A DNA stretch of 64,000 nucleotides from Leucoraja erinacea (lineage: Eukaryota), in contig NC_073381.1 in NCBI RefSeq assembly GCF_028641065.1, positions 19,406,001 through 19,470,000 of the forward strand, given 5' to 3'. Below the pieces are notes generated by a model, which was given only the letters and a program-made list of their open reading frames with translations, had not been told where the DNA came from and ran no database searches. A program made the translations under genes and the position numbers. Below are positions 3,356-64,000 of the stretch, piece by piece (positions within the stretch are counted from its first letter, which is position 1; every line of letters begins with the position of its first letter).

Positions 3356-3648
3356 TTTTAGTTATAGAGATACTGCATGGAAGCAGGCCCTTTGGTCCAC
3401 CTAGTCCACACCGACCATCCTGTACACTAGTTCTATGCTACACACTAGAGACAGTTTGCAGAAACCAATTGACCTGCAAACCTGCACGTCACTGGAATGT
3501 GGGAAGAAACGGAGCACCTGGAGGAACCCCATGTGGTCAATGGGAGAACACACAAAATACGTACAGACAGCACTCATAGACAGGATCAAACCCAGGTCTC
3601 TGGTGCTGTGAGGCACCAGTTCTTCCGCTGCACCACTTTGTCGCCCCG
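3356..3648 (-). mobile_element. tRNA-derived V-SINE (HE1-like) with CR1-type tail
   Basis: The reverse strand shows a tRNA-like head, central gttctccc...gtgggt...ctccg.tttcttcccacattcca domain and ggcctg...tgtatctcta tail. Same family as 12556 and 52805. Confidence 0.8.
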
Positions 3649-6793: not shown

Positions 6794-7791
6794 CTAAGAG
6801 TAAGGAATAAAAGTTAACACACACTAAGAATTGAATGTGGTTCTGAATTTAAACATATTTAACTACAATTTTATCCTAATATTCCCTCATGTTTGGGCCA
6901 AGTCTGTATCACATTCCTGTGACAAGATTAATAGCATTTTTTAGTTTTCCATTGGTATTAATAGTTTAAAAAATTGCAATATACAAATGGAACTGCCAAT
7001 TATAGGCAACATATTGTTTTCAATTAGAGCATCAAGCTACAAAAATATATAGTGGTGCATTTGCATTATAAGACCCATTTAAACTATATTCATAACCATT
7101 GGCTTTAAATGTCTGTGTTTGAACTTAACTATACCCAAAAGGAACCCAAGAACTTCAGGTTCAGCCTGTGAACATGTTAATTCACAAAAAGGTTGTATTG
7201 TAGTTAATGCAAAACAAGGCGTTGGTTCAAATATAGGATAATAAGCAAGTTTCTATGGCCTTTCCCAAACTAATTTTACAAAGGGATAATTCATCATCGA
7301 ATTCAATAATTGCATTCATCGGCATAGTTACCTTTGACACAAAGGGTGTGTGAGATTGATGGAGCTTTTCTTTGTTGGCACTAATGCTTTCTTTGAATTT
7401 CAATGAAAAAGTGAAGCCACTTATGCTAATTGTTTCTAATTAAATTGAAAATGATTGGGAGGAAATGCCCGATGGCACGGTTAGAATAAACATCCAATTT
7501 GCTCCACACATATTTTTGATTCTGAGGCAATTAAATTGTGAATGTAATTATCTGGAGCAGAGCAATATTTACCTTGTTAAAGGAAGGATAGCTCGGGTCA
7601 ATATGTGATGAGAAATTGGAAATGATGAATGGATTCACAATTTTATTGTGCACAGCAATCAGAGCCCAACTTCACTGGTGCAATTCAAATATTGCTCTCA
7701 CCAACCGAAGACACCATAGGTTGGGAGCGGAAGTCAAGAGTAATCAAGAGCACTTAATGCCAAGTTTACAAACATAATCCTTCCCTTGCAG

Positions 7792-8028
7792 ATAGACCCA
7801 AAATGCATGAGTAACGCAGCGGGACAGGCAGCACTGGATAGAAGGAATGGTTGACATTTCAGGTCGAGACCCTTCTTCTGTCTGAATTACTCCAGCATTT
7901 TGCGTCGGCAGTTCCTTCCTACATCCTTCTCTTGTAGACATAAAACGCTGGAGTAACTCAGCGGGACAGGCAGCATCTCTGGAGAGAAAGAATGGATGAC
8001 GTTTCGGGTCGAGACCCTTCTTCTTACA
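7792..8028 (-). mobile_element. Two adjacent Penelope-derived short elements
   Basis: Two copies of ctggagtaactcagcgggacaggcagcat...gacgtttcgggtcgagacccttcttc, bounded by three copies of a ~15-bp target (7777-7791, 7922-7937, 8029-8044). Confidence 0.75.
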
Positions 8029-9420: not shown

Positions 9421-9497
9421 CCCGAAACGTTGCCTATTTCCTTCGCTCCATAGATGCTGCTGCACCCGCTGAGTTTCTCCAGTTTTTTTGTGTACCT
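9421..9497 (+). mobile_element. Penelope-derived short element (subfamily B) inserted in a microsatellite tail
   Basis: cccgaaacgttgcctatttccttcgctccatagatgctgctgcacccgctgagtttctcc between two acaatacaata runs. Confidence 0.75.
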
Positions 9498-9600
9498 ACA
9501 ATACAATACAATTTTTATTTGTCATTTGAACCTCATTGAGGTTCAAATGAAATGCTGTTTCTGCAGTCATACACACAAGAAGTATAAGTGCAAGACATTT

Positions 9601-11365: not shown

Positions 11366-12380
11366 ATGAGGACCAAAGTTGTGCCAATGAAAGTCAAAGA
11401 AGCCATTGTGAGACTGAGAAACAAGAATAAAATTGTTAGAGACATCAGCCAAACCTTAGGCTTACCAAAATCAACTGTTTGGAACATCATTAAGAAGAAA
11501 GAGAGCACTGGTGAGCTTATTAATCGTAAAGGGACTGGCAGGCCAAGGAAGACCTCCACAGCTGATAACAGAAGAATTCTCTCTACAATAAAAAACCCAA
11601 ACACCTGTCAGACAGATTCCAAATACTCTTCATGAGTCAGGTGTGGATATGTCAATAACCACTGTCTGCAGAAGACTTCATGAACAGAAATACAGAGGCT
11701 ACACTATAAGATGCAAACCACTGGCTAGCTGCAAAAATAGGATGACCGGGTTACAGTTTGCCAAGAAGTACTTAAAAGAGCAACCACAGTTCTGGAAATA
11801 GGTCTTGTGGACAGATGAGACGAAGAGTAACATATCAGAGTGATGGCAAGGGCAAAGTATGGAGGAGAGGAGGAACTGCCCAAGATCCAAAGCATACCAC
11901 CTCATCTGTAAAACACGGTGGTGGGGGTGTTATGGCCTGGGCATGTATGGCTGCTGAAGATACTGGCTCACTTATCTTCATTGATGATATAACTGCTGAT
12001 GGTAGTATCATAATGAATTCTGAAGTGTATAGACACATCCTATCTGCTCAATTTCAAACAAATGCCTCAAAATTCATTAGTCAATGGTTCATTCTACAGC
12101 AAGACAATGATCCCAAACAAACTGCTAAAGCAACAAAGGAGTTTTTCAAAGCTAAAACATGGTCATTTCTTGAGTGGAAAAGTCAATCACCCGATCTGAA
12201 CCCAAATGAGCATGCCTTTTATATGCTGAAGAGAAAACTGAAGGGGACTAGACCCCAAAACAAGCATAAGCTAAAGATGGCTGCAATACAGGCCTGGCTG
12301 AGCATCACCAGAGAAGACACCCAGCAACTGGTGATGTCCATGAATCGCAGACTTCAAGCAGTCATTGCACGCAAAGGGAC
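11366..12380 (+). pseudogene. Frameshifted Tc1 DD34E transposase
   Basis: HTH (ISQTLGLPKSTVWNIIKK), GRPRKT, WTDE, VKHGGGGVMAW, and QQDNDPKQ...SPDLNPNE with exactly 34 residues between D and E; split across reading frames. Confidence 0.92.
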
Positions 12381-12555
12381 AGATGTCTTGTCCAATATTT
12401 ATTTCTCAATCAACATCAGTTTAAAGCAGCACTAATATTGGAACAATTTTGGCATGCATTAATCATTATTTTGTTTAACACATTGCCTCAGCAACCACAT
12501 GTCAAAGATACTTAATTGGTTAAAAAGGTCCATGGAATTTTCTGAAAGAAAAATG

Positions 12556-12924: not shown

Positions 12925-13235
12925 GGGGGTGACTTGTTGGAGTATATATGATTATGAGAGGCATAGATAGGTGGATGGTCAAAATATTTTTCCCATGGTA
13001 CAGGTATGAAAAACAAGAGTCCATAGTTTTAAGATGAAATGAAAAATAGGAGTTTTAAAAAAGACCTAAGGAGCAAGTACTTTTTTTTTCACACAGAGAG
13101 TGGTTGATATTTGGAACAGGCTGCCAGACATGGTTGTTGAATCAGACCCAATTACAATGCTTAAGAGACATTTATACAGACACTTAAACAGGCAAGGCAT
13201 AGAAACATAAGGTTCCAATGTGGGCAAATGGAACC
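12925..13235 (+). mobile_element. Old CR1 3' fragment
   Basis: GDLL.VY.IMRGIDRVD and FFTQRVVDIWN remnants. Confidence 0.7.
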
Positions 13236-13524
13236 AGAGGCACGAAAAGCAGCAAAACTCCATGACTCCATGCAATACGTTAACATTTTGAAGGTACAAT
13301 ATATTGAGCAACACAAATGTGGGATGAGTGACAACCATAAGATCATAATGGCTGGATTGTAATCATGTATTGTCTTTCTGCTGACTGGATAGCATGCAAC
13401 AAAAGCTTTTCACTGTACCTCAGTACATGTGACAATAAAATAAACTGTAATAATACTCAAGGACACATTAAATGATTAACAGTTGCCAGATTCTTACCAA
13501 ATTCATTCCAAAAGCAAGACTTAC

Positions 13525-13631
13525 CAACACTTCTGGTCCTCTCCAACGTCCCATCTCTTTCTCTTGGCCCATCATACTCTGTCAGTGCACTAGTGGAACC
13601 TTGGTGATCATGTAGAACAGGTGATTGGCAC
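13525..13631 (-). CDS. sipa1l2: SIPA1L2 coding exon (CQSPVLHDHQGSTSALTEYDGPRERDGTLERTRSV)
   Basis: Acceptor aattaaaag and donor G|gtaagt; 107 nt, phase 2-1. Joins the upstream exon to give GYDGCQSP, as in SIPA1L2. Confidence 0.88.
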
Positions 13632-14378
13632 CTTTTAATTACAAGCAGAATTACTTTTAATACCAACGCCAGGCATATTTATCAATTTTCTGTAGAGTGA
13701 TCACAACCTAAGAAAGATAAGCCTACGTGTATACACAGCCAATATTGATGTTGTCATTGCACTGCCCTTTGCAATGTTTTACATAGTGCTAGATTTACTA
13801 TTTGAGTGCAGCAAGATTAAATTTGTATTTACAAACATTTCATCACTTCATCAAAACTCCTGAAGACAATGCTTTCATTTTGTAGCAGTCATTTTATGTG
13901 TAGGCAAACACAGCACTCAACTTTCAAAGAACAAGCTCCAGAGATGAATCAGCTGACTGATTGCTGATGCAGTACTGGTTAAGGAATGAACAAAACACTG
14001 CATGAATTATTTCATGGCACTGAATAGGCAAGTAAAGTTTGAAGTGATCATTAATTGAGAGGTTGCGTTGACATAAATCTCTGCTATTGACTGATAATGT
14101 CTTCTGAATTCAAAACCTAAGTAAAACTCTAGTTATTCATCCTCAGGAGATGTTATCATTGATTACCCCGCACAACAACAGAGAGCAGAGTTCAAAAGTA
14201 ATGCTTTGGCTGTGAAATGCTTTGGGAATTTGTGGTCAATATTAAAGCATGTTGTCCTTCTTTAGTGAATTATACTACTCCTCTCCCTGACAAAAATGAA
14301 TTTCTCAGTGTAAGCTAAAATGGTTGATGCAAACGTACAGCACACATTAACCAAATACAAAGAGCTCAGTCAGAACTT

Positions 14379-14695
14379 CGGGCGGTATAGTGGTGAAATT
14401 GTACAGTGATGGAACGTGCCAGAGACTGGATTCAATCTTGACCTCAAGTGCTGTTTGTGTAGAATTTGCAGGCTCTCTCTGTTACTGTGTGGCTTTCCTT
14501 CTGGTGCTCTGGTCTTCTCCCACATACCAAAAAACTGTGGTTGATAGTTGAATGGCTACAGAAATTGCCCCGGGTATGTGGGTGAGTATTGAGTCAGAGG
14601 AGAGTTGATGGAAAAGAAGGAGCATAAAATGGGGACTGATGATTTGGAATGGACTTATTGGGTTGAAGAACCTGCTTTCTGCTGTATTTCTCTGA
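14379..14695 (+). mobile_element. Degenerate V-SINE
   Basis: ggattcaatcttgacctc...tgtgtagaatttgca...ctcccacatacca, similar to the copy at 12556. Confidence 0.65.
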
Positions 14696-14772
14696 GATCA
14701 TCTCCTCATGAACAAATTACAATGCTTTCAAAATAGTCATTGCATGCTCTAAAGGATTCCGTAATTATAATA

Positions 14773-14924
14773 TGTAAGAAGAAACTGCTGCTGCTGGTTT
14801 AAACTGTAGACACAAAAAGCTGGTGTAGCTCAGTGGGACAGGCAGCATCTCTGGTGAGGAATAGGTGACGTTTTGGAAGAAGTCTGAAGAAGGGTCTCGA
14901 CCCGAAACGTCACCCATTCCTCCT
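14773..14924. mobile_element. Penelope-derived fold-back element with an intact hammerhead core on +
   Basis: 11-bp TSD taattataata (14762-14772 and 14925-14935); CTGAAGA (14884-14890), aGGGTCtcGACCC, GAAAC GTC (14904-14911). Confidence 0.8.
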
Positions 14925-15379
14925 TAATTATAATAACCTATTGGAAAGTGGCAAATTAGAAATTACAAAATGGCATTTAGTACAAATCACACTTCAATCA
15001 GATTAACAGTAAAGGATTGTTCTTTCAACTTAAATGCAAAGTAAAGCTTATGTTTACTTATCTACCTCCAAGGAGCACAGAAATCTCTTGCATTCTCCAG
15101 AAATCAATCGAAAAAACATCTTGCCCATCTCTGAAAAATGCTCAATAATTTTTTTCTCCAATTTCCCACAGTTAAGTAGTAAACTCATTTCCTACATTTA
15201 CACAACACAGTCATGTTCCACATATAGATCAATTGGTCGCAGTAGACACCAGATCAATTTAAACTAAACAGCAAATTAAAATAAAAGAAGTAGGTTGAAA
15301 GAAAGTCTTTCAAAAGTGTATAGTGATGACAATGTGTAAAACTTGAAGCACGTGCTCTAAACTGACAAGTGATGCGGTG

Positions 15380-15690
15380 ATGGGGAGTGCTACATTGTCA
15401 GAGGAGTGCTGCTTTGTGAGAGATGCTGGTTCTTGGGTGAGATGTTAAACTGAGATCCCATCTGTCTGTAATAACTCCCATTGTACTAGTTGAACAAGGG
15501 ATGGGTAATTGTCCCTTGTGGTCTGGTAATATCTAATTTATACTAGAATTGATTATCTTGTCAAGCTTGTCCACGGGAGTGAGTGCTGCATCTCTTATAT
15601 TAAACCAATGAATACAATTCAAAAGTACGTGAAGAGCATTGGGATAGTCAGAGGTCTTGAAAGGTATTATAAAAATGCAGCTTTTTGGAG
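15380..15690 (+). mobile_element. Old Deu-domain SINE remnant
   Basis: gagtgctacattgtcagagg, gagatgttaaactgag and gaaaggtattataaaaatgcag-type segments. Confidence 0.55.
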
Positions 15691-16732
15691 CATTCTAATA
15701 TTCCTAATAAAGTAAATCTGTCTCACTTTGAATGGTCAAATATAAAATATGTCCTGTAACATTAGATTATATCATCAAGAACATTTAATCACATGTATCT
15801 GCTATAAAAACACTTGAAGACCATGAAATAATCTAAACATTATGAAAATATTTACTTCGGTCTCAAAAAATAAATCAACTAGCGTTTTCTGTGTTTTTAA
15901 ATATCTTGTGATTAGCTTGATTTGAGACGTTGTACACTTTGTGTATCCTTTTGAAGCCTGCTGACAAAAGTCCCTGGCCCAAGAAAGGAATTTTATTAGG
16001 AATTAGGAAGAAATGGCACATAGAATGCTACCCTCGCTTCATCATAGATTCATGGTTATCCAGCACGGATATGCCGACCAATGTCAACTTTATACAAAAT
16101 TCCGTCTTGATACAGGCCAAGCCCAAATTGTGACCGTCTGATTTATGGACACCCATAGTCACAAACGAGCTCACATAATATTATTAAATTTCATAAGTCT
16201 GACATTGGTACATACATTAATTCCAACAAATAGCAGAAGTATTCTCTCTCTGCACTTTTAGTCTTTCTTATTCATCTTATGTGCTTTTGATGCAATTCAT
16301 TACAATACTGTAAAGGTATGGTTACAAGTGAGTAATTTCTGTGTATCTTCTAACATGAACAAATTGACTTATGGACATCTGTAAAGCCAGAACCTGTTCA
16401 TTACTCTGGAACAACCAGTATATATTTGATTTAGTTTGTTACAGTATAACAAATAATTTTAAAGTGATGCAGTTTGAACATTTCCTCAAAAGCATCTGCA
16501 GAGAGTGTATAATATACATCTACCAGCTAGTTATTGAAAACTGTACCCATTTAATTTTAAGTGGATTGCCTTGTTTGTTAAAATACCCTTTCTTGGCTGG
16601 TAGCATTGCCAGAGCTGAAGCAATATTTGAGACCCTCCGCATGCATCTCTAAGTTATTATGGTAGAATCTGTGGAGCGTTCAGGAGACCAAACTCAGCTT
16701 TCTGTAAATACAAGTCGAAAGTAATTGCATAC

Positions 16733-16885
16733 CCATCATATCCAGATTGTTGCCTCCAATGACTACTGCCACTCGGCCCCGGATCACTGGAAGATGACTG
16801 GTTGCTGGGAGAGCTTCTGTAATGTTGACTGGAATCACCAACATTGGATTGCGAGAGCTGAGCATTTTCTACATCTTGCATAGAT
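16733..16885 (-). CDS. sipa1l2: SIPA1L2 coding exon (SMQDVENAQLSQSNVGDSSQHYRSSPSNQSSSSDPGPSGSSHWRQQSGYDG); the acceptor may alternatively be at 16816
   Basis: Acceptor ttttcctcttgcacacag and donor GG|gtatgc; 153 nt, phase 2-2. SSPSNQSSSSDPGP...GYDG matches SIPA1L2. Confidence 0.88.
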
Positions 16886-18094
16886 CTGTGTGCAAGAGGA
16901 AAACAAATGCTTTCAGTGTTGGGTGAAAAGAACGCTTGTTTGAAGATGCAACTCAGTGACTATTATGCACAAATCAATGTTCTTAATTTAAAGATAATTA
17001 TATTACATTATACATTAAATAAATTTACACCACCAAATTGGCCATTCAGCCGACTTGACGATGAAAGTATTATTTATGATCCACACAAACCTTTTCATCT
17101 CGTCTTTCCGTACCAAACTATGCTTTTGTGACTTAAAACAAATGTTATTTTTCTCTTTCTGCCATTATTTGCCACCAGTATCATCCATTCCTTCCAACTT
17201 CATCAGCTCCCTATACCACCGAAAACCTAAACTGATACATTTTACAGCAGCTGATACAACGCAGTACACAAATGGTTAATTAGAAAGTGAAGAAAGACCA
17301 TACTGGTTTGTTTGTCCTAGATTTTTACAGAATGGCCAAAGTCATATGGTGGCCTGTCACTGAGTGTTTGGTTGACGATAACAACGTATGTCACTTTGTG
17401 TGCAGGATGTTTAACCTGGAACAAGAGCACTAATGTAAAAGGGATGATTATATTAATATTTAAGGGAAGATGCATGACCAGCAAAGCTGCTGCACTGAGA
17501 GACCAGTACAAACCAGCATTAAAATGTCCCACTGTTCAATGTGGAAATTCTGCCTGTTGACCATGTTACGTTTGAAGAATCATGGGGCAGAGAAGAGTTA
17601 TGCAGTGATGAGTCTGGAATTTTCAGAATGACCTTAAGGAGCTTTGAGTTATGGATGCTTTCAGAATGCTTATAGAGGGGCTGATGGAGATGAAAGTCTC
17701 TCTTACGGCAAAGGGAGAACTTTGGATAGTGATAAGCTGTTCGTTCAGTCCAACAAAGGTCCACGGTAGCTTACAGCCCACCACGTGACTGGGATAGGAA
17801 GAAGGCTCCAGTCTGAGGTGGCAAAGGTAGTGTTGAGTCTTCAAGGTAGCAGAGGAAGGGGTTGGGATTGATCTCTAGGCAAGTAGATGTATCCCATTGT
17901 GTAAAGAAATATAAGATGAATGGTGTTCATGCAAGATTCCTTGAAGTTAGAGGAAGGTACATGCGTCACACCAGCCCACCAACCTGGATCTAATTGCATG
18001 GTGATCATGTGATTTGGGATTGGGAGGGGCAAAGTGAATAGCCATTGATATCTGTGGAGCTTTCCCGTTTCTGGATACCCTGCATCATTCGTCA

Positions 18095-22269: not shown

Positions 22270-22448
22270 TGTAGGAAGAACCTGCAGATGCTGATTTACA
22301 CTGAAGATAGACACAAAATGCTGGACAGGCAGCATCTCTGGATAGAAGAAATGGGTGACATTTTGGGTCAAGACCCTTCTTCAGACTGAGAGTCAAGGGA
22401 GAGGGAGACACAGAGATAAGGACGGGTAAGGTGAAAACAAGACATCAA
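22270..22448 (-). mobile_element. Penelope-derived short element
   Basis: tgtaggaagaacctgcagatgctg...gggtcaagacccttcttcagactga followed by a purine-rich UTR-like stretch. Confidence 0.75.
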
Positions 22449-30429: not shown

Positions 30430-31177
30430 CTGCCCAACAAAGAATATTTGGTTTGTTAGATGAGGGCATAATAACCTTGACTACGGTACAACCACCCAAC
30501 CCCCACCTTTAGAAATAATCGGAACAAAATAATGAAACACAGAACACGGTTTACACTGCTGTACAATAGGGGTGATTTTGTTTTCCATGATTAAAGCAGA
30601 CCTCACAACACCTATAGATGCAGCTGGCTGGTCTGACTGTGCTGCAGGGACCCATGCGGCTCCAGATTTAACCCTATGAATAACACACAATAAACCCAAG
30701 CGTGCAGAGTAAAATATATTCATCAACAAATTTCTGCCGAGACCAGTGCTGAAGGAAAAACTGTCAGAAGCAGTGATTTGAATGTGTTGGGTTATTTATG
30801 GTGTACCATAGATACAAAACATATTGCTGAATCAATGAATAAGCTGAGGCCTTGTTTATAACTATACTTTTGTCCTCTCAGTGTGATAAGCAGAGTGGGG
30901 GTTTGGGTGTTCGTGAAGAGAGGGGTTAAGACTCCCATATGTGACACATGGATAGCACCAACTACAAGATACCACAGCTGCTTCAGTTATATTTTTACCA
31001 TAAGTATGGGGGCACTAAATATGCTTACCATCTGAAAAATCATAACCCCTCATACCAAGTGAGTCAGCTGGACTTGTTTCTGAGCACAGCTAGACTTCAG
31101 CTATGATTTATGAATTCACTATAATCACCTATTGCTCAGTAAAAATATCTGAAAAAGTCAGACAAAACTTCCAGAAG

Positions 31178-31263
31178 TAGACACAAAGTACTGGAGTAAC
31201 TCAGTGGGTCTGACCTGCACCTGTATTTTTTTGTTAAACAGCACCTGCAGTTCCTTGTGTCTC
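31178..31263. mobile_element. Short Penelope-derived fold-back remnant
   Basis: agacacaaagtactggagtaactcag ... gcacctgcagttccttgtgtct. Confidence 0.55.
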
Positions 31264-34830: not shown

Positions 34831-35280
34831 GTCTCACTACCATTGGGAAAAATGTAAAGGTGGCTGAAAACCATTAACTTCAAGTTTTCCAGAAATCTAG
34901 CTGTTGAACACAACACTAACTACCTCAGCCACCATGATCTGATCTACTGTGGATTTTGTTTGGGGTGCACTGCATACTTTGGCTCTGCACTAGTATGCTC
35001 TGGTTACCTTGTGTTACTGATTAATAATTTATTGTATTCATGATATCCATTTGTGTGTTATCGCTTTAATGGGCCTGTAACGCTGCAGCAAGTAGGCATT
35101 TCATTGTTCTGTTGCCCAGTACACATGACAATTAAATATTCTTGACTTTTGAGATCTTCTCCCCATCATACACCAGTTAAAGCAGACATCAACAAAGCTA
35201 CTAACAAGTAATGAAAATTTGCCTTGATGCGCACTGTTCCAGCATAGATCTTATGAAATCAAACTACTCAAATGGTAGTC

Positions 35281-35368
35281 ACCAAATGCTGAAGTGACTC
35301 AGCGGGTCAGGCAACTTCTATGGAGAGAAGGAATAGGTGACTTTTCGGAACGAGACCCTTTCTTCAGT
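35281..35368 (-). mobile_element. Penelope-derived short element, degenerate
   Basis: actcagcgggtcaggca...ggaataggtgacttttcggaacgagaccctttcttcag. Confidence 0.7.
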
Positions 35369-35440: not shown

Positions 35441-35760
35441 GTGTTAAAGAAATATCTGCAGATGTTCGAAAATCGAAGGTACACAAAAATGCTGGAGAAA
35501 CTCAGCGGGTGCAGCAGCATCTATGGAGCGAAGGAGATAGGCAACGTTTCGGGCCAAAACCCTTCTTCAGACTGATGGAGGGTGGGGGGAGGCGGGGAGA
35601 AGAAAGGGTAAAGGAGGAGGAGGAGCCCGAGGGCTGAGGGAGAGGTAGGAAGGGGAGGAGACAGCAAGGGTTAACGGAATTGTGAGAATTCAATGTTCAT
35701 GCCGCCAGGATGCAGACTCCCCAAGCGGAATATGAGGTGCTGTTCCTCCAATTTCCGGTG
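35441..35760 (-). mobile_element. Penelope-like element 3' end: GIY-YIG endonuclease C-terminus, UTR and hammerhead-bearing pLTR
   Basis: 35760-35671 translates to HRKLEEQHLIFRLGSLHPGGMNIEFSQFR*, the typical PLE E..I..L....P.G.N ending; CTGAAGA-aGGGTTttGGCCC-GAAACGTT follows at 35570-35543. Confidence 0.88.
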
Positions 35761-35824
35761 TAACTGTCCTCCAATTTCAGGTGTAACAGTCTCATCAATG
35801 ACTGTTGATGAGAAACCGCTAATC

Positions 35825-42276: not shown

Positions 42277-43076
42277 CAAGAAGAACTGCAGATGCTGGTT
42301 TAAATCAAAGGGAGACACAAATTGCTGGAGTAACTCAGCGGGTGAGGCAGCAGCTCTGGAGAGAAGGAATGGGTGACGTCACCCAAGAGCTTCAAATTCC
42401 TGGGCGTGCACATCTCTGAAGATCTTTCCTGGTTCGAGAACACTGATGCACTTATCAAGAAAGCACATCAGCGCCTCTACTTCCTGAGAAGATTACAGAG
42501 AGTCGGTTTGTCAAGGAGGACTCTCTCTAACTTCTACAGGTGCACAGTAGAGAGCATGCTGACCGGTTGCATCGTGGCTTGGTTCGGCAACTTGAGCGCC
42601 CTGGAGAGGAAGAAACTACAAAAAGTAGTAAACACTGCCCAGTCCATCATCGGCTCTGACCTTCCTTCCATCGAGGGGATTTACCGAAGTCGCTGCCTCA
42701 AAAAGGCTGGCAGTATCATCAAAGACCCACACCATCCTGGCCACACACTAATCTTCCTGCTACCTTTAGGTATAAGGTACAGGAGCCTGAAGACTGCAAT
42801 GACCAGGTTCAGGAATAGCTACTTCCCCACAGCCATCAGGCTATTAAACCTGGCTCGGACAAAACTCTGAACATTAATAACTCATTACTTGTTATTTGCA
42901 CTTTATCAGTTTATTTATTCATGTGTTTTGTAGTCAATGCCTATTATGTTCTATGTGCTGAAGCAAAGCAAGAATTTCATTGTCCTATCAGGGACACATG
43001 ACAATAAACTTGAACTTAAACTCCTTCTCTCCAGAGATGCTGCCTCACCCGTTGAGTTACTCCAGCATTTTGTGTC
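42277..43076. mobile_element. Penelope-derived fold-back element split centrally by a Rex1 fragment
   Basis: Arms 42277-42383 and 43021-43076 are inverted; 20-bp duplication catctaaatcattaatatat at 42257-42276 and 43077-43096. Confidence 0.8.
42384..43020 (+). mobile_element. Rex1/Babar 3' fragment, same family as 22760-24110
   Basis: Open frame KSFKFLGVHISEDLSW...RFRNSYFPTAIRLLN; tail gacaataaacttgaactt. Confidence 0.92.
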
Positions 43077-44499
43077 CATCTAAATCATTAATATATTGTA
43101 AATAGTTGCAGTCCCAGCACCAAGCCTTGTGGCACTCCACTCCCCACTGCCTGCCATTCTGACAGGGACCCTTTTATTCCTAGTCTTTGTTTCCTGTCTG
43201 CCGACCAATGCTCTATCCATGTCAATACCCTATCCCCAATATCATGTGCTCTAATTTTGCCCACTAATCTCATGTGTGGGACCTTATCAAATGCTTTCTG
43301 AAAGTACAGATACACTACATCCACTGGCCCTCCTTCATCCATTTTACTTGTCACATCCTCAAAATATTCCAGAAGATTAGTCAAGCAGGATTCCCCTTCA
43401 TAAATCCATGCTGACTTGGACCAATCCTTTTACTGCTATTCAAATGCGCTGTTATTGCTTCTGTAATAATTGACCCCAGCATCTTCCCCACCACCGATGT
43501 CAGGCTAACTGGTCTGCAATTCCCCCTTTTCTTTCTCGCTCCTTTCTTGAAAAGTGGCATAACATTAGCTACCCTCCAATCCACAGGAACTGATCCTGAA
43601 TCTACGGAACATTGGAAAATGATCACCAATGTGTTCACGATTTCTAGAGCCATCTCCTTGAGTACCCTGGGATGCAAACCATCAGGCTCTGGGGATTTAT
43701 CAGCCTTCATTCCCATCAGTCTACCCAATACTATTTCTTGCCTAATACAAATTTCTTTCAGTTCCTTTGGCTTCCTTGACCCTCTGGCCTCTAGTACCTG
43801 TGCAGGTGAATTTATGGGATATACCCCACTTTTAACTAAGGAGTGCATGGAATTTACAATGATAGGTAGTGTTGGGAGAGCTTGAAAAACTTGAACATGC
43901 TTACATGTACTTTCTGTATGGTGCTCAGGAAGACTCTGCAAGGCTGTAGCCGAATGCCAGGGATACACAAGATTGCCAGGGAAGTCCCCCAAGGATGCGA
44001 GTGCAGTTCATGGTTGCTTGGGGAAATATGCAATCCCCGCTTGGTCTGCTCCAATGGGCAGAAGTATGAGAAGGTGAGGTCTCCACTCCTTCAATATAGC
44101 ATTCCCATGCAGCTTTGATTAGCAATTTGAGATTGTGTCATAGATCACAGCAGCTTGGAACAATCCTGTGGCTGGAGAGGAATGTGTGACTGTAACCTTA
44201 ACCTCTAAAAAGAAATCAGTCAGGCATGTGTGTATACTTGTGTTCGCAGGTAAGATGGCGATGACAATGAATGCTGCTCAAGGAATGGTCCTCTAAACAG
44301 CATGGTTTTAGGGTAAACAGCAATTCTGCATATTGTTCTTCTTTTTCGGGCTTTTGCAGGAATTTTACAACAGAATGAAGGTTTAGAGCTTGAAAGAGAA
44401 ACATGAAAGTCAATAAAAAATTGTTATTTTTCAATATTAGGTGTGTAAATGTCACCAATAATTTGACTGGTCCAACTACATTGGCGACACGGCCAAGAA

Positions 44500-48771: not shown

Positions 48772-48870
48772 GTGTAGGAGAGAACAGCAGATGCTGAGTA
48801 ACTCAGCAGGACAGGCTGCATCTCTGGTGAGATGGAATGGGCGACGTTTCGGGTTGAGGCCCTTCTTCAG
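48772..48870 (-). mobile_element. Penelope-derived short element
   Basis: 13-bp TSD actccattccttt (48759-48771 and 48871-48883); hammerhead-like core at 48843-48870 on minus. Confidence 0.8.
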
Positions 48871-49746
48871 ACTCCATTCCTTTCCCTAGGTTCGGTCTGA
48901 AATTGACCCAGACTGTTTGCAACCAGAGTATTGCATTCAATCTCAAGATGAACATCAGTGCATACATCTGCACTATTCCCAATACCATTTATTTCTGCAT
49001 CTGTAACCACTTCCAATTTCCCCCTTGCTTAGTTATTTCATGCATTTGTTACTTCCGGGCTTGTAACTATTACAAAGCTTGTAACTTGTAACTATTACAA
49101 AGAATTCCTGGATGTCATACTTTTGTTTTACTTGTTATATGCTCAAGGGCATTTGAACTCTGCTGTCCTCCAGTTCAGCTATCTGAGCAATTCAAAGATC
49201 GTAGCTCCTCCACTGGAGATCATTTCCTCAGCTGCCAGTGCCCCAATTTCTGGAATTCCATTGCTGAGTTATTCTAGCCCCCTTTCCTCTTCTGCTTCCT
49301 AAAATGAATCTCTTTGCATAGCTTTCGGTGATCACTTGTAATGCTTTGCTTGGTGCAGCAAATATTGCTAGATAATGTTAAAATGAAGCACCGAGAGATA
49401 GTTTGTTTTGCTGAGTGTACTCTTAAGAATACAATTACCGTGTGGGAAATAGAAAGTGTGACTGTATGAGATGAAAAGGGTCCACCAAGCAATGACTGCA
49501 TAAACACGACCATTGTGAAAATCTTTACTGTGAAAAAAAAGAATATTGCAATTGGAACAATTATGTCAACGTAATATATTTTAAATTAAAATAGAAAACA
49601 TTCTATTGTAACTTAGTTTTAACTCAATAGAAATAGGAGCCAAAGCATCCGTTTTTTTTACACGCCCAGGAAACTAACCTTTGGAAAAGTTGTGTCATAT
49701 CAAAGCCAGAATTTCAAACCCCATTACACCATCACTGTATTTTAAT

Positions 49747-49825
49747 GTGTAGGAAGGAATTGCAGATGCTGGTTTAAACCAAAGTTAGACACAAAAAACT
49801 AGAGTAACTCAGCGGGATAGGCAGC
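49747..49825 (-). mobile_element. Penelope-derived short element (extreme 3' end only)
   Basis: gtgtaggaaggaattgcagatgctgg...actcagcgggataggcagc flanked by attttaat on both sides. Confidence 0.7.
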
Positions 49826-51799
49826 ATTTTAATTTTGGATTTACTTAAACCAAATGAACCAAACTTCAGCACACACAGATTGGTGGATTTGGAACCAACT
49901 CGGGAAAGAAACATTTTGTACCTAAACTGAAATTTCTAAAACTCAATCCAAATTATTCAAAGGAGCTTGAAATGTGTGAAAGGGCAGAGAGCCTGAATAA
50001 CTTCAATACTCTTTTGTTCTTACAACAAATAATCTCTGCATGTAAATGTTAACTCTTTTCTTGGGTACAATTTAGCATGGTTCACAAAGTCATGTGAAGC
50101 ACAGGAAGAATAAAGAAAAGGAAACATTCAGTGCATTCTGCAATACAAGAAATCTCTTGTGCCAACCTTAAAATAACACGTGACTGCTGACTCAAGCTTG
50201 GCAGGAGAACCAAGTATATGTGTCGGGTTCAGGTTGATGTGGACAAGACCTCAGGCTTGTGTCATGTTCAGGTTGGATTCAAGGTTTCATTTTATCAGAG
50301 CCAAACACGCGTAATATTCAAAATTCAGGCACTAAAGAAAACGCCAAAGATCTGAAATTCCTTTGATCCAACAAGGAGTTCAGTGGCGCAGGCAACTTAT
50401 CAAGCACCTCTATCAGACCATCATTTCCACCTTCATGGGAAAACAAGCCATGTTTAGGCAACATATCCTCATAATCACGTTTCTAACCCTTGGGTATCAT
50501 TCTGATTAATGACAAGTATGTAAAGTTACAGGAAAGGCTGCAGTAGCAGGAAAATATCACTCCCACTCATCACTTTCAGCAACATCAGGGTAGAAACCAT
50601 ACAGATGTATGGTATGAGAGGTATATTTTTTTTTTGGGGGGGGGGGGGGGGGAAGTTATGTTGGAAGGAAAGAGGGGTGTGTCCAGCATCCACCTACTAA
50701 TACAACATAGACATTCACACTCCTCTGCTCAAGTAGGTCCAGATCTAAAACTTTTTACTTTTAAAATGGAACTTTGCCCTGGTGTGTTTAGTGACTATTT
50801 TTAGTCAACCCATGCTAATGGGATTATTTATTAAATGGGCTGACCAAGCCAAGCTGCTTTTAGTGGAACACTCGCAGTAAATATCCACCATTGGCAGTGG
50901 AACTCAGGATACAACTAGTTAAACATCTGTATGGTTTCTATAGCTCCGATAATGTAGATAATCTTAGATGTACAGAAGAATCAAGCCTTCTTATAATTTA
51001 TGAATAGATGTTACAAGGGAATTTAAAAATGTTTGATCCTTACATGCCTGAAAACATGAAATGAGCAACAATTCTAAATTATAAGCTGTTAGTAGCATTG
51101 TGACCATGTTCCATCATTAAATTTAATAAACCGGAAAGTATAAAAGATATATTTAAACTAAATGATTACCTGTACATCCTGTTGAAATCCTGTTGAAATT
51201 ATTCCATACAATAATGTTTAATTTATAATACTTTGTTTTAGGATAGATCGTCAAACTCAATATGTTTTTTCCTCATCCTGTGTAATTCATATGATCTAAA
51301 CCAGAGACACTGCATTTGGCACAGATTAACTGAGCAGCTGTTTTGCCTGCAGGATATAAAAGAAGCTCAGATTTTCAATGTGAAGCCTTACATGGATGCT
51401 TCCAACTCTCATTTGTAAAAAAAAAAGGGCCACAATGCTTGTGCTTCTGAAAAATACAGTGACTGCAATTACAGCTCGAGGAGATGGAAGAACAAAGCTT
51501 ACGTCTGCTTGTGAACAAAGCAACTGAAAGCTTTTTGGTCATTCTCTGGTCTAGTCAGACAGGAGAGCACCGAGCAGAGCATGGCCTTGATTTTTATGGT
51601 TTACAGATGGAGTGCTTACTTCGATTAGAAGCCCAGATAATGGGAAGGGTGGAGAATCAGGAATGATACATGTATATTGGAACAGTATAAACGAACACTC
51701 TCCCACAATGACAATTATTTGGAATTAAGTAAACATAATCAGGGGAAAGAACTGACTGACCAAAACAAGATTATCCAACTGACGATTTGAACAATTCAT

Positions 51800-52411: not shown

Positions 52412-52509
52412 TGTTTAAGAAGAAGGGTCTTGACTCCAAACGTCACCCATTCCTTCGCTCCATAGATGCAGTCTCACCCGCTGAGTTTCTCCAGCATTTT
52501 TGTCTACCT
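52412..52509 (+). mobile_element. Penelope-derived short element
   Basis: 12-bp TSD tctgacctactc (52400-52411 and 52510-52521); begins at a decayed hammerhead core. Confidence 0.8.
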
Positions 52510-52804
52510 TCTGACCTACTCATGTAACTGTAGTATCTATGGCCGGCATTGTTTAATGCTGAAAATGTCTTATGTAAACATCATGCTGTATTTGCACAAT
52601 TTGGTCACTAGGTGTCCTGTGAAGCAAATGTTTTGAGGTATTTTTTCCAGCCATGGCACCATCTTGGTTTCCCCACTCGATCAAGATCCGAACAAAATTT
52701 GAACAAGATCAGTTGAATTTTAAACGCTATGCTTAAAAACACCCAACATATCCCTATAGGGAACTAACAACAATGAATTCTTTGGATGCAAGAATAGGAA
52801 AATG

Positions 52805-58662: not shown

Positions 58663-59221
58663 CAGTCGAGTGGCGCATGGAGTGGCGTGGAGGAGTGTGG
58701 ACTACGTCCTGCACTAAATCTTCGCGCGCCACCGGCCTGTCGCGTAACTGACGGCTAAAGTGGGACAGGCCGAAGACCCTGGCGTAACGCGACATCTCAC
58801 CTCCAACAGCAGCAGAAGCAGGCAAACGATCGCCAAGCTCGGCCTGGGGCTCACGGCCGTTGCGGATCCGGATCCGCCCCCACTCCTACTCCCAGAGCGG
58901 GGCCAAGACAATTGAAGATAGACACAAAATCCTGGAGTAACTCAGCGGGACCGGCAGCATCCTTGGAGAGAAGGAATGGGTGGCGTTTAGGGTCGAGACC
59001 CTTCTTTCAGACTGAAGAAGAGTCTCGACCCGAAACATCATCCATTCCTTCTCTCCAGAGATGCTGCCGGTCCCGCTGAGTTACTCCTGCATTTTGTGTC
59101 CATCTTCAAATGACGTCACGAGCTCCAGACGGCTGTGATGGCGCATGATGACGCGCGCGACTCTCGCGGGACCGTCACTACCGGCCTGTCGCGGAAGTGA
59201 CGGCCCAAGTGGGACAGGCCC
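58663..59221. mobile_element. Left-truncated Harbinger-type MITE with an internal copy of its terminus
   Basis: Right end AAGTGGGACAGGCCCT+TTA as at 2341; the internal repeat accggcctgtcgcg...tgacggc..aagtgggacaggcc occurs at about 58731-58771 and 59180-59220. Confidence 0.65.
58912..59109. mobile_element. Near-perfect 198-bp fold-back Penelope-derived element
   Basis: ttgaagatagacacaaaat...cccttctttcag | actgaagaagagtctcgacccgaaac...attttgtgtccatcttcaa; the two halves are reverse complements. Confidence 0.88.
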
Positions 59222-59224
59222 TTT

Positions 59225-61330: not shown

Positions 61331-62293
61331 AAGTATATCAGCTACTGCTGATCTCGGTCAGATCTCACTTCTGCATTAGGTTGGGCACCCAAGCTCCATA
61401 CTCAAGCTCAGATAGAGCAGGTCTGATACCATGCAAGTGTTGCTATTGACTTCACTCATGTTGAATTACTACTTACAGAGGCCTCCCTAGCAACCTCCTG
61501 CAGGAGTGCCCATCTTTCGTTCAGGACTGTCTGAGTGACCTCCCCTGCATCAAGAACATGCCTACTGTGAGTACTGATCTCCACCAGCCCAGCCAAATCC
61601 CTCTGATCACCTGTGAGTACCCCCCCCCCCCCCCTCCATTTACCATAATCACACAATCACTCCTGAGCAGCAAAAGAATGCAGCTGGAAGTGGGCTGCTT
61701 GCAAAAAGAGTAATTCCTTCAAGAGCTGTTTCCTTGACCTTGTAGCTGCGAGGCTAAATGATGGCAGCTGTGAGAATTTGCAATAGGTCAGTGCGATAGC
61801 ACATGAAGAAACTGACACAGCACGGCGCTATGCATGGGAACCCTGGGAAAACTGTTCTGAAGACTTTGCAATGGTGGATCACAATCTTTATATGACTTAT
61901 ATGAAGTTATGCCAGCACACAACTTTGAAGAAGAGTTGCTAGACTGAAATGTTCAGCTTATTCAGTTCTGACCACTAAATACTTATCAGAAGTGGTGTGT
62001 ACGGGTCTGAATAAGTGTAGTCGGAAAAATGGCCGAACCAAACACACGATAACAGAACAAGATTGTTTCTTTTATTGTACAATTTCTGTGCTGCTTCTAA
62101 TTTTAATCCTAATACCATTCTTCCTCAGTTTTTATACCACACTTTTTGAATCACTCAGAATTACACACAAGTTTCCACACCCTTTCTCTTTCTATTTGCA
62201 TTAAATGTGTCTTTACTGATGGTGCCAAATATAACTTTTCTCGATTGGTATATTTGGCTGCAAGCAATAAATGGGACTGGGGATATTAAAATG

Positions 62294-62604
62294 TCTGACG
62301 AAAGGTCTCAGCCCAAAAGTCACCCATTCCTGTCTCTCCAGAAATGCTTAAGAAGGAACTACGGATGCTGGAAAATCGAAGGTACACAAAAATGCTGGAG
62401 AAACTCAGCGGGTGCAGCAGCATCTATGGAACGAAGGAAATAGGCAACGTTTCGGGTCTGAAGAAGGGTTCCGACCAGAAACGTTGCCTATTTCCTTCAC
62501 TCCATAGATGCTGCTGCACCCGCTGGGTTTCTCAAGCATTTTTGTGTATCTCCAGAAATGCTGCCTGTCCCGCTGGGTTACTCCAGCATTTTGTGTCTAT
62601 CTTC
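62294..62604 (+). mobile_element. Penelope-derived element (subfamily A) containing a nested subfamily-B fold-back copy at 62349-62548
   Basis: Outer TSD atattaaaatg (62283-62293 and 62605-62615); inner TSD tctccagaaatgct (62335-62348 and 62549-62562). Confidence 0.88.
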
Positions 62605-64000
62605 ATATTAAAATGCTGCTGCTTATGTGGGTGGGAAAGATAGGTCAGCTGGATGAAGGATCTTGGAGTATTTGTAAGTGCCACACAACAGCAACAACAC
62701 ATGTTCCAAGAGGCATACAACAGATCCAGCTACAGATAAATTTCAGATAAAAATGCCCAAAACCTCGGGGTATAAATAGTAAATGGGGCGCTTACACATT
62801 GCATCTTTGGAATCAACTCTCAGCATTAGTATGTTAGTTTATTTCTTAAGCAGAAATACAGGTTTTCAGTCTTTTTGACATATTGAAACCAGAATATGGT
62901 TTGTAAAGTTAAGAAACATTTGTAATTATTTGTGGTCATTACTCTTTGCTTATTCAGTAACACTTTGGCTTCATTGGAAAAGTCAAATCTTAATAACAAT
63001 CCAGTTCCTTATTAAATTCGCATTTTTAGGAGAGACTTATGCCTCACAAAGTTCATATTGGAATTAAGTAATCTTTCTAATCTTCACTTCACTCAGATAT
63101 TATGGTCAGAGCCCATAAAACATACCATGGATACTCCGCAGGTATGACCTCATGTTGTTAAATATTTAACAAATCACTCTCAATAGCTTTGCCAATCTCT
63201 TTGTTTTCCCGAAGTACCCAATGTCTGGGTTTCATTACACAGCTGCCAAAGTTCTATAAACTGTACTTTTGTCACGTCCCTACAAATAAGTTGCAGACTG
63301 AATTGAAAGCAACCACCACACATCATTGAATAAAAAACATTCAATTAATTTTGTTGATGATTTGGTCATTTTATTATAGAAAACTAAAGCACTAAAATAC
63401 CTTGTGAAACCTTGCCCGATGGTTATGAAAGCATTCTGGCAACTGAACAGTATGGTCCAGTCATTGACTAGGGAACCAAACAAGCAAGTTTATAGCATGG
63501 ACGGGGACCATTTGGCCCTTCATGCCTAAGCTGACTCTGCAAATAATCGTATTGCTTTTGGTCTTCCTAGAACCTTTTTTATTTCTTTGCTTCACTCAAA
63601 ATGTAATGGTTGTTTGCTTGTTCTAAAGCTTTGCATGTTTCAATTAATCTGTTGTGCGTATAACATTTCTGCTAACCTCTTTCCTCACTGTCAATTACTG
63701 TTTGAAATTGGCAACTCCCATCACTGTCTCTGCAATCAGAGGAAATAGTCTTTCCTGAGTCACTTGTTAGGATTTTTAACAAAGCTTTTAATTTTAAAGG
63801 GAGCACAAGAATAGGGGAACTTTTAAGATGACAAGACAAACTTACAAATTAATTTATTTAGCTTATGGGTTTCATAAACATAGAAACAGACAAAAGACAG
63901 GAGGTTCTGTTAAACCTATACTCAACTTGTTTGACCTAGCTTTAGAAAGAATAAGGGGCCATGGAAGGCCATAGCAGATAGTCTGAAGGTGGAATTATTG

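What the first reader, a model, noticed from the sequence alone, without database searches (positions are those of the whole stretch)
14773..14924. Abundant short mobile element carrying a minimal hammerhead ribozyme (Penelope-derived, retrozyme-like)
Seen: at least 13 related inserts of 80-320 bp (7792, 7938, 9421, 14773, 22270, 31178, 35281, 35441, 42277, 48772, 49747, 52412, 58912, and two at 62294), many with 8-20 bp TSDs. The best copy reads CTGAAGA-a-GGGTC-tc-GACCC-GAAAC-GTC, which is the hammerhead core CUGANGA / stem II / GAAA / NUH. Stem III has no loop and is a self-complementary ACGU. Stem II stays pairable in subfamily B (GGGTT-tt-GGCCC, with G.U pairs). Known: Penelope-like elements carry minimal type I hammerheads thought to cleave as dimers. 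Inference: this is a high-copy, mostly non-coding ribozyme-bearing retroposon family (about one per 5 kb here) mobilised by a PLE. Caveat: stem I is very short (GU/AC), so activity is unproven.
Basis: partly seen in the sequence, partly recalled or inferred. Interest (0 to 1): 0.85.

Follow-up and report, generated by a model that had tools for sequence, protein, structure and literature searches.

The report
Penelope retrotransposon tail copies with hammerhead motif
The short repeats are broken-off tail ends of a Penelope-like jumping gene that carry that group's known minimal hammerhead-ribozyme motif, an ordinary product of the family with no sign here that the motif cuts RNA.

Summary
All 15 listed inserts exist (22 arms by nhmmer), 10 of 15 have 9-18 bp target-site duplications, and the quoted hammerhead core is at 14884-14911.

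The inserts are 3'-terminal copies ("tails") of an endonuclease-bearing Penelope-like element (PLE).
- One copy (35446-35775, minus strand) runs upstream into the last ~30 codons of an ORF. That ORF piece is 83% identical to the C-terminus of a little-skate protein with RVT_1 and a weak GIY-YIG match.
- The family shows the published PLE insertion hallmarks: two alternative 3' ends about 30 nt apart (11 short, 9 long), inverted second arms in 6 of 15 events, and AT-rich duplications.

The motif fits the PLE minimal hammerhead, except that helix I has 2 bp and helix II has 4 bp.
- No Rfam hammerhead model matches it.
- Covariation is nil.
- Only 2 of 12 motifs are intact.
- The flagged copy folds as a long hairpin that buries the core.
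- Raw RNA reads of a related organism show abundant transcripts on both strands but no read ends at the predicted cut sites.

No head-to-tail arrays occur, so "retrozyme-like" is not supported. Earlier follow-ups of this scan, on other pieces of this genome, reached the same reading.

The parts
14773..14882 (-). Inverted arm of the flagged insert. PLE-sense on the minus strand, profile columns 18-132, ending in the long (tail) 3' end.
   Evidence: nhmmer E 1.6e-26; alignment
14881..14924 (+). Short arm of the flagged insert that carries the hammerhead motif, profile columns 3-46. Its outer end is not one of the two usual 3' ends.
   Evidence: nhmmer E 2e-10
14884..14911 (+). Minimal hammerhead motif: CUGAAGA, bulged A, helix II GGGU/ACCC with loop CUCG, GAAA, then CGU-C. 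The predicted cut lies between 14911 and 14912.
14762..14772 (.). Left copy of the target-site duplication TAATTATAATA. The right copy is at 14925-14935.
7786..7923 (-). Fold-back insert. One arm spans columns 2-103 on the minus strand; the inverted arm 7882-7923 (+) spans columns 70-132 with the tail.
7934..8028 (-). Solo tail copy, columns 3-97. It has a 17-bp duplication with 1 mismatch and lies next to the previous insert.
9421..9502 (+). Subfamily B tail copy, columns 23-104, with an 18-bp duplication.
22270..22388 (-). Tail copy, columns 2-132, with a 14-nt internal deletion. It continues upstream into a pyrimidine-rich tract.
31173..31256 (-). Small fold-back made of two truncated arms, columns 55-101 and 70-126.
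   Evidence: second arm E 0.04, weak
35268..35367 (-). Older tail copy, columns 6-104, with a damaged motif.
35446..35574 (-). Subfamily B tail with an intact motif (C3 at 35570). The predicted cut lies between 35543 and 35542.
35575..35670 (-). 3' UTR between the stop codon and the motif. The 99 nt measured (35572-35670) are 86% pyrimidine and end in CAG directly before UCUGAAGA.
35671..35769 (-). End of the PLE ORF (...RKLEEQHLIFRLGSLHPGGMNIEFSQFR, stop codon at 35673-35671).
42277..43079 (-). Fold-back insert with a perfect 17-bp duplication. The arms are 42277-42386 and 43021-43079, with a 5'-truncated LINE 3' part between them.
48774..48874 (-). Tail copy, columns 2-131, with an internal deletion and a 14-bp duplication.
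49748..49829 (-). 5'-truncated tail copy, columns 53-132, without the motif.
52417..52514 (+). Tail copy, columns 6-104, with a 13-bp duplication.
58910..59112 (.). Nearly complete fold-back of two arms, columns 2-105 and 2-106, joined at the motif's 5' edge.
62292..62613 (+). Outer tail copy (duplication TATTAAAATG), split by the nested insert.
62349..62552 (.). Nested subfamily B fold-back. Its arms span columns 20-130 and 3-100; the duplication is 18 bp.

Best explanation
The inserts are dead-on-arrival 3'-terminal copies ('tails') of a canonical endonuclease-bearing Penelope-like retrotransposon of an elasmobranch genome, made by that element's own target-primed reverse transcription.

Shown here:
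- The unit lies about 100 nt downstream of the stop codon of a PLE-type RT/GIY-YIG ORF.
- Copies end at one of two 3' positions about 30 nt apart.
- Six of 15 events carry a second, inverted arm.
- Duplications are 9-18 bp and AT-rich.
- The minimal hammerhead motif sits 65 nt (short end) or about 100 nt (long end) from the 3' end.

Inferred by analogy with the Anolis element (PMC11167929):
- The element's protein binds the RNA segment just downstream of the motif and nicks both target strands.
- It starts cDNA internally at either of two sites, which gives the optional tail.
- It can extend from both nicks, which gives the inverted arms.
- Most cDNAs stop at the 5' edge of the motif. This is probably the 5' end of the commonest template RNA, for example when priming occurs in the 5'-proximal terminal repeat of a full-length transcript.

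The motif is the family's known minimal hammerhead. If it cuts at all, it would cut after GUC or GUU, and only as a dimer through the ACGU palindrome or with protein help. In the flagged copy the core is locked in a long hairpin with the inverted arm, so that copy is very unlikely to cleave.
For: Family anatomy:
- 22 arms in 15 events.
- 3' ends: 11 arms at profile columns 97-110, 9 at 125-132 and 1 at 46, out of 21 assessable arms.
- Inverted arms in 6 of 15 events.
- Duplications in 10 of 15 events, 72% A+T against 59% for the window.

Link to a parent element:
- The ORF end is contiguous with the subfamily B tail.
- A 32-aa query found 14 proteins at E<=1e-3 among 1.84 billion. The single-stretch matches at protein C-termini whose source I looked up are all elasmobranch.
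- The best clean one, P0003 of Leucoraja erinacea, is 83% identical. It has Pfam RVT_1 at 5.6e-19 and GIY-YIG at 0.008, which is below the curated cut-off.
- Short subfamily B copies share the diagnostic bases of the ORF-linked copy.

Motif features match PMC4209133.

Published PLE hallmarks are 5' truncation, an inverted adjacent copy, a 30-40 bp tail, two RT start sites, and nicking and extension of both strands. Sources: PMC8557442 (passages) and PMC11167929 (parts 1-2).

RNA:
- 32,251, 33,302 and 34,119 reads laid in three raw RNA runs.
- Equal depth on both orientations in the two bulk runs.
- No place where molecules begin or end.
Against: - Only about 30 codons of the ORF are in the window, and no RT domain of this element is present, so the parent is inferred from one copy plus homologues.
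- GIY-YIG in the homologue scores below Pfam's cut-off.
- No partial-tandem terminal repeat is seen here.
- Ten of 21 arms end within columns 2-6. That is too sharp for random 5' truncation and would equally fit a discrete short template, that is, a non-autonomous lineage.
- The outer end of the flagged 44-nt arm (column 46) is not a normal start site, and the two-start-site model does not explain it.
- The RNA runs are from 'organism A', whereas the DNA holders of the window are 'organism C'. The reads therefore test the family, perhaps in a relative, not this locus.
- They are oligo-dT or single-cell libraries, and the tool lists ends only above a fifth of local depth.
Confidence: 0.82

Rival explanations
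1. A distinct non-autonomous, SINE-like lineage. A discrete RNA of about 100-130 nt starts at the motif's 5' edge, parasitises the PLE machinery and amplifies on its own.
For: Ten of 21 arms end at columns 2-6. In reads and contigs of other organisms most family members diverge right after ...CAGACTGA, with 2,959 to 3,952 loose ends per RNA run and 631 contigs at 35360. Depth drops about 30-fold in RNA and about 22-fold in DNA word depth across that edge.
Against: Subfamily B short copies carry the same diagnostic bases as the ORF-linked copy. The depth drop is confounded by divergence of the UTR between subfamilies at the 80% likeness threshold. No promoter or tRNA-like head was found. Priming in the 5'-proximal repeat of a full-length RNA would give the same discrete end.
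Confidence: 0.15
2. An animal non-LTR retrozyme: tandem hammerhead units transcribed, self-cleaved and circularised, then reverse-transcribed.
For: A go-back joint (35346 to 35287, plus 6 letters) is seen in 367 reads of X23, 615 of X24 and 64 of X21, and in no contig of the DNA run X17.
Against: The 66-nt unit implied by that joint lacks CUGANGA and helix II. The window has no head-to-tail array of the family. No read ends pile up at the predicted cut sites. X17 is another organism, so the joint may simply be a genomic satellite of organism A.
Confidence: 0.03
3. The motif is kept as part of the RNA module that the PLE protein recognises or folds on, or as a passenger, and not as a working self-cleaving ribozyme.
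For: Helix I has 2 bp. The hammerhead-like fold scores -3.9 and -4.5 kcal/mol against competing folds of -9.3 and -9.4. No ends appear at the cut sites. In Anolis the motif needs protein to cut, is dispensable for insertion, and leaves no RNA-seq ends (PMC11167929, part 2). Naiad PLEs thrive without it (PMC8557442, passages).
Against: The core boxes are identical between subfamilies A and B (0 of 14 columns differ against 16 of 101 elsewhere), although one-sided p is 0.107. The G.U wobble in helix II of subfamily B pairs only on the sense strand. D. virilis PLEs also have a 2-bp helix I (PMC4209133).
Confidence: 0.45
4. A tRNA-derived SINE or a fold-back DNA transposon (MITE).
For: On the antisense strand ...GTAGCTCAGTGGG resembles a box A. 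The copy at 58910-59112 is an almost perfect 100-bp inverted repeat.
Against: ARAGORN finds no tRNA in the window. Single arms have their own duplications of variable length. Arms are truncated at variable inner points and end at two fixed outer points. One copy is joined to a retrotransposon ORF.
Confidence: 0.01

Closest known systems
Minimal hammerhead motifs (min-HHR) of metazoan Penelope-like elements (Cervera & de la Pena 2014, PMC4209133)
   Same: Type I order with CUGANGA and GAAA boxes, one unpaired nucleotide between A9 and G10.1, a G10.1-C11.1 pair, no helix III loop and a palindromic ACGU. They lie in the terminal region of PLEs, are mostly found as single motifs in truncated copies, and sometimes occur as two motifs on opposite strands 100-700 bp apart.
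   Different: Helix II here is 4 bp with a 4-nt loop, against 6-8 bp reported. Helix I is 2 bp against 4-5 bp; only the D. virilis variant is reported with 2 bp. I could not see the paper's supplementary descriptor or alignments.
Poseidon PAc of Anolis carolinensis (Frangieh et al. 2024, PMC11167929)
   Same: Two adjacent cDNA start sites explain an optional 30-40 bp tail. Both target strands are nicked and extended. The hammerhead lies about 90-125 nt upstream of the element's 3' ends. No RNA-seq ends are found at the cut site.
   Different: In PAc the ORF starts inside the motif. Here the motif lies about 100 nt downstream of the ORF stop, and no conserved ORF start follows it: subfamilies A and B differ by a 1-nt indel after the only ATG.
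Animal non-LTR retrozymes (Li, Clavereau & Pollet 2026 preprint, 10.64898/2026.07.22.740005)
   Same: Non-coding, PLE-derived sequences with a type I hammerhead. Monomeric 'solo' derivatives are described as dispersed.
   Different: Retrozymes are defined by head-to-tail arrays with a motif in every unit, and by circular RNAs. Neither is seen here.
Schistosoma Sm-alpha SINE-like hammerhead elements (as summarised in PMC6765202)
   Same: A short dispersed retroposon carrying a type I hammerhead.
   Different: Sm-alpha has a promoter and a canonical, active hammerhead with tertiary contacts. No promoter or tRNA-like head is found here, and the motif is minimal.

Membership tests
PLE minimal hammerhead (min-HHR) | CUGANGA and GAAA boxes in type I order, with H17 not G | tested here: met
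   14884-14911 and 35570-35543. All boxes are kept in 4 of the 12 arms covering the motif, and 2 of 12 are fully intact.
PLE minimal hammerhead (min-HHR) | [quoted passage not shown] | tested here: met
   The bulged A is present in 12 of 12 arms. G-C at the first helix II pair is present in 9 of 12.
PLE minimal hammerhead (min-HHR) | No helix III loop; palindromic 15.2-16.2 (ACGU) for dimer formation | tested here: met
   GAAA-CGU is present in 6 of 12 arms. The losses are CpG-type changes.
PLE minimal hammerhead (min-HHR) | Long helix II (6-8 bp) and helix I of 4-5 bp | tested here: not met
   Helix II is 4 bp plus a 4-nt loop, and helix I is 2 bp. A 2-bp helix I is reported for D. virilis only (PMC4209133).
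PLE minimal hammerhead (min-HHR) | Compensatory changes within consensus families | tested here: inconclusive
   0 of 6 pairs have changes on both sides. 85.5% of cells are paired, which 500 of 500 shuffles reach or exceed. The 12 decayed copies come from two subfamilies only.
PLE minimal hammerhead (min-HHR) | Self-cleavage after H17 | tested here: inconclusive
   No place where many molecules begin or end in three raw RNA runs at depths up to about 7,000. However, these are oligo-dT or single-cell libraries, possibly of another species, with a 20% listing threshold.
Endonuclease-bearing Penelope-like element insertion | [quoted passage not shown] | tested here: inconclusive
   Only the last ~30 codons are in the window. 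The homologue P0003 has RVT_1 at 5.6e-19 and GIY-YIG at 0.008, below the cut-off.
Endonuclease-bearing Penelope-like element insertion | Optional 30-40 bp tail (two alternative 3' ends) | tested here: met
   11 arms end at columns 97-110 and 9 at columns 125-132, out of 21 assessable arms.
Endonuclease-bearing Penelope-like element insertion | Inverted 5'-truncated copy adjacent to the insert | tested here: met
   6 of 15 events.
Endonuclease-bearing Penelope-like element insertion | Partial tandem copies forming pseudo-LTRs | tested here: not met
   No direct tandem of the family in the window. The only period-50 row, at 62500-62602, is the nested insert.
Animal non-LTR retrozyme | Head-to-tail array with a type I hammerhead in each unit | tested here: not met
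Animal non-LTR retrozyme | Circular RNA joined at the cleavage site | tested here: not met
   The only strong go-back joint (35346 to 35287) is not at a cut site, and its unit lacks the core. 260 further joints were not shown.
Rfam hammerhead families | Score against the curated covariance models | tested here: not met
   No hammerhead family at gathering score over the whole window, at E<=1 over the whole window, or at E<=10 on 14700-15000 and 35500-35620. This is expected for a motif without helix III.
tRNA-derived SINE | tRNA-like head | tested here: not met
   ARAGORN found 0 genes in the window.

The most novel reading that the evidence does not exclude
The ~100-130-nt tail may be a self-sufficient mini-template with a defined RNA 5' end at the motif's edge. 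That end would be created by RNA processing, not by random cDNA truncation. In both copies that extend upstream, an 86% or 78% pyrimidine tract ending in CAG abuts UCUGAAGA. This looks like a 3' splice site, placed just as the D. virilis Penelope intron end abuts helix I. On this reading the hammerhead-plus-tail module is a processed, SINE-like parasite of its own parent that outnumbers it 20-30 fold. The 66-nt go-back form seen in RNA would be a further derivative, either a satellite or a small circle.
Probability: 0.15. Interest if true: 0.5.

Novelty: new member of a known kind. Interest (0 to 1): 0.2.

Why it matters
It matters mainly for annotation. About 3% of this window (2,075 of 64,000 bases) is Penelope tails. 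Their fold-backs mimic microRNA precursors: one hits a plant miRNA model at E 8.6e-6. Their hammerhead cores invite over-interpretation.

For ribozyme biology the family adds an elasmobranch example of the PLE minimal hammerhead with the shortest helices. It also adds a second vertebrate case, after Anolis, in which RNA-seq shows abundant transcripts but no ends at the cut site. The sharp 5' boundary at the motif's edge is a small open point about how PLE templates are made.

Tried and rejected
- **Rfam models.** No hammerhead family matched at any threshold. The weak miRNA hits reflect only the hairpins.
- **tRNA-like head.** None found, so the tRNA-SINE idea was dropped.
- **Tandem arrays.** None of the family were found.
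- **Conservation of the core versus flanks among all arms.** Core boxes are 92.1% majority (175 of 190 cells). Downstream columns are 90.3%, 87.0% and 86.8%. There is no clear excess, as expected for decaying dead copies.
- **Subfamily comparison.** Five arms were left out of both groups as unassignable or too short: 52417-52514, 35268-35367, 31173-31220, 31210-31256 and 7882-7923. 0 of 14 core columns differ against 16 of 101 others, p 0.107, so the test is underpowered.
- **Covariation.** None found.
- **An ORF start after the motif, as in Anolis.** Read by eye on the alignment: subfamilies A and B differ by a 1-nt indel downstream of the only ATG, so I rejected it.
- **Snap-back of one cDNA as the sole origin of fold-backs.** Rejected, because in three fold-backs one arm holds columns the other lacks (7786/7882, 14773/14881, 62349/62455).
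- **Search of the window for the 66-nt joint.** One hit at 3 mismatches against 0.22 expected by chance, so it is absent here.
- **Literature search for a description in cartilaginous fishes.** None of the listed papers combined Penelope, ribozyme and a chondrichthyan term. One search listed only 10 of 697 papers, so absence from print is not shown.
- **Not available.** Lunse et al. 2017 was not held. Supplements of PMC4209133 (descriptor, alignments, cleavage gels), of PMC11167929 (Fig. S2) and of the 2026 preprint (species table) could bear on the helix-length criteria and on which chondrichthyan was sampled; I did not see them.

Full report
**Observation.** CTGAAGA-A-GGGTCTCGACCC-GAAAC-GTC lies at 14884-14911. 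The insert sits between two copies of TAATTATAATA, at 14762-14772 and 14925-14935. A degenerate core pattern with up to 3 mismatches gives 8 matches where 100 shuffles give none. BLAST of the copy against the window and a profile built from 8 natural copies find 22 arms at E<=1. Two of these are weak: 7882-7923 at 6.6e-4 and 31210-31256 at 0.04. Together they cover 2,075 of 64,000 bases.

**Anatomy.**
- Aligned in the hammerhead-sense orientation, the unit has 132 profile columns. These are: AGU; CUGAAGA (columns 6-12); a bulged A; GGGU, a 4-nt loop and ACCC; GAAA; CGU; C or U (column 33, the predicted cut follows it); about 65 nt more; and an optional extension of about 30 nt.
- Of 21 assessable 3' ends, 11 lie at columns 97-110, 9 at 125-132 and 1 at 46.
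- Of 21 5' ends, 12 lie at columns 2-6. Two of those copies (22270-22388 and 35446-35574) in fact continue upstream. The other 9 ends are scattered from column 18 to 70.
- Six of 15 events consist of two arms in inverted orientation: 7786-7923, 14773-14924, 31173-31256, 42277-43079, 58910-59112 and 62349-62552.
- In three of these, one arm holds columns that the other lacks. A single cDNA folding back on itself therefore cannot explain them all.
- Direct repeats of 9-18 bp with at most one mismatch flank 10 of 15 events. They are 72% A+T against 59% for the window. One of them, at 7786-7923, overlaps its neighbour's repeat and is doubtful.
- The flagged insert is one of the fold-backs: a 110-nt arm with the long 3' end, and a 44-nt arm that happens to carry a perfect motif.

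**Parent element.**
- On the minus strand, the subfamily B copy at 35446-35574 continues upstream through 99 nt that are 86% pyrimidine. Beyond that lies a stop codon at 35673-35671 and the reading frame ...RKLEEQHLIFRLGSLHPGGMNIEFSQFR.
- A 32-residue query found 14 proteins at E<=1e-3 among 1.84 billion representatives.
- Most single-stretch hits match at the extreme C-terminus of the protein. The four I looked up are from Leucoraja erinacea, Hemitrygon, Rhincodon typus and Hypanus sabinus.
- P0003 (little skate, 83% identical) has RVT_1 at 5.6e-19 followed by a weak GIY-YIG match at 0.008, below the cut-off. Several other hits are gene models that end in a captured PLE piece, for example a GPCR (P0006).
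- The window therefore most likely comes from a skate or ray. This is an inference, because the run names were coded.

**The motif as a ribozyme.**
- It has the boxes and the three idiosyncrasies that Cervera and de la Pena list for PLE minimal hammerheads (PMC4209133, main text read): the extra nucleotide after A9, the G10.1-C11.1 pair and the palindromic 15.2-16.2 without a helix III loop.
- Helix II is 4 bp, where they report 6-8. Helix I is only GU/AC, where they report 4-5 (2 in D. virilis).
- No Rfam hammerhead model matches at any threshold tried.
- The hammerhead-like fold scores -3.9 and -4.5 kcal/mol for the two intact copies. Competing folds pair GAAGAAGG with the CCUUC downstream and score -9.3 and -9.4. 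The dimer form with a 4-bp helix III scores -12.7 and -13.3, against dimer optima of -21.7 and -29.1.
- The whole flagged insert folds into a long hairpin (-56.7 kcal/mol, z -4.4) in which GAAACGUC is paired with the inverted arm.
- Of 12 arms that cover the motif, 2 are fully intact and 4 keep all boxes. Losses at the CG of ACGU look like CpG decay.
- Between the majorities of subfamilies A (13 arms) and B (4 arms), with 5 arms left out, 16 of 115 columns differ and none of the 14 core columns does. One-sided p is only 0.107.
- Helix II of subfamily B has a U.G pair that would be a C.A mismatch on the other strand. This is a hint of sense-strand constraint, but it rests on one substitution.
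- Formal pair counts show no compensatory change: 0 of 6 pairs, with the paired share no higher than in shuffles.

**RNA.**
- No listed RNA run holds the locus. The raw RNA runs offered carry the label 'organism A', whereas the DNA holders of the window are 'organism C'.
- I laid three raw RNA runs and one DNA contig set on 35150-35850 at 80% likeness. About 32,000-34,000 reads per RNA run were laid on the two copies, and none on the unique flanks.
- In the two bulk oligo-dT runs both orientations are equal, for example 6,808 against 5,739. The single-cell run is skewed about 5:1 to one orientation, in the tail and in the ORF piece alike. Its chemistry is unknown to me, so the sense cannot be named.
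- Depth falls about 30-fold from the motif to the UTR in RNA and about 22-fold in DNA word depth. RNA abundance therefore tracks copy number, as expected for copies carried passively in host transcripts.
- The table of places where many molecules begin or end is empty. The predicted cut sites are 35543|35542 and 35339|35338.
- Thousands of reads diverge right after ...CAGACTGA. This confirms the sharp 5' boundary outside this window.
- A joint going back 60 nt plus 6 extra letters is frequent in RNA (367, 615 and 64 reads) and absent from the DNA contigs of the other organism. Its 66-nt unit lacks CUGANGA and helix II and does not occur in the window.

**Comparison with what is known.**
- Craig et al. 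(PMC8557442, passages) describe PLE insertions as heavily 5'-truncated, often with an inverted truncated copy alongside and a 30-40 bp tail at one end.
- Frangieh et al. (PMC11167929, parts 1-2) show for an Anolis element that both target strands are nicked and extended, and that cDNA starts at two adjacent internal sites that explain the tail. They also show that the hammerhead needs protein and is dispensable for insertion, and that RNA-seq shows no ends at its cut site.
- Everything seen here fits that picture, except that no partial tandem occurs in the window.
- Animal non-LTR retrozymes are defined by tandem arrays and circles (2026 preprint, parts 1-2). That definition is not met.

**Mechanism.**
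- Shown: the link to a PLE ORF end, the two 3' ends, the inverted arms, the duplications, the motif's features, and the absence of cleavage ends in the reads examined.
- Inferred: protein binding downstream of the motif, dual priming, and a template RNA whose 5' end lies at the motif's edge.
- Unexplained: why the boundary is so sharp, and why in both upstream-extending copies a pyrimidine tract ending in CAG abuts it. This recalls the D. virilis intron end at helix I (PMC4209133). The column-46 end of the flagged arm is also unexplained.

**Verdict.** This is an ordinary member of a known kind. Earlier follow-ups of this scan, on other pieces of the same genome, reached the same reading.

Noticed in passing
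window 35287-35346 (seen in reads): RNA reads of organism A hold a head-to-tail form of a 60-nt piece of the tail plus 6 extra letters (66-nt unit). It is seen in 367, 615 and 64 reads in three runs and in none of the DNA contigs of organism C. The unit lacks the CUGANGA box and helix II. It could be a satellite born from the tail or a small circular RNA.
   Followed up: partly
window 42277-43079: One fold-back insert with a perfect 17-bp duplication has a 5'-truncated LINE 3' part (ORF end plus UTR, 42387-43020) between its arms. This is either a later LINE insertion without a visible duplication or a template switch during Penelope reverse transcription. The two arms meet at the ACGT palindrome of the motif.
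   Followed up: partly
window 35572-35670 (-) and 22386-22445 (-): Directly 5' of UCUGAAGA, both copies that extend upstream have a pyrimidine tract (86% and 78%) ending in CAG, like a 3' splice site. The sharp 5' boundary of most copies falls at this point.
   Followed up: partly
window 62405-62525 (-): The nested fold-back scores E 8.6e-6 against the plant MIR1507 precursor model, below its gathering score. This is a long-hairpin artefact, but such fold-backs could feed small-RNA pathways.
   Followed up: no
window 7923-7937: The insert at 7934-8028 landed right at the end of the fold-back at 7786-7923, and the nested pair at 62292-62613 is another tail inside a tail. This fits the reported habit of PLEs of inserting into or next to earlier copies.
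   Followed up: partly
window 9612-10373, 23109-23705, 31901-32776, 41841-42870, 46631-48234, 59116-60771; 11815-12435: There are many fragments of LINE reverse-transcriptase ORFs, and one ORF that by eye looks like a Tc1/mariner transposase. My one Pfam attempt on some of them failed for another reason, so none was checked.
   Followed up: no
window 13000-17000: Fifteen small runs of organisms A and B and of unnamed origin each hold the same 6% of the sampled words of this stretch. I did not find out which part it is; it could be a shared repeat.
   Followed up: no
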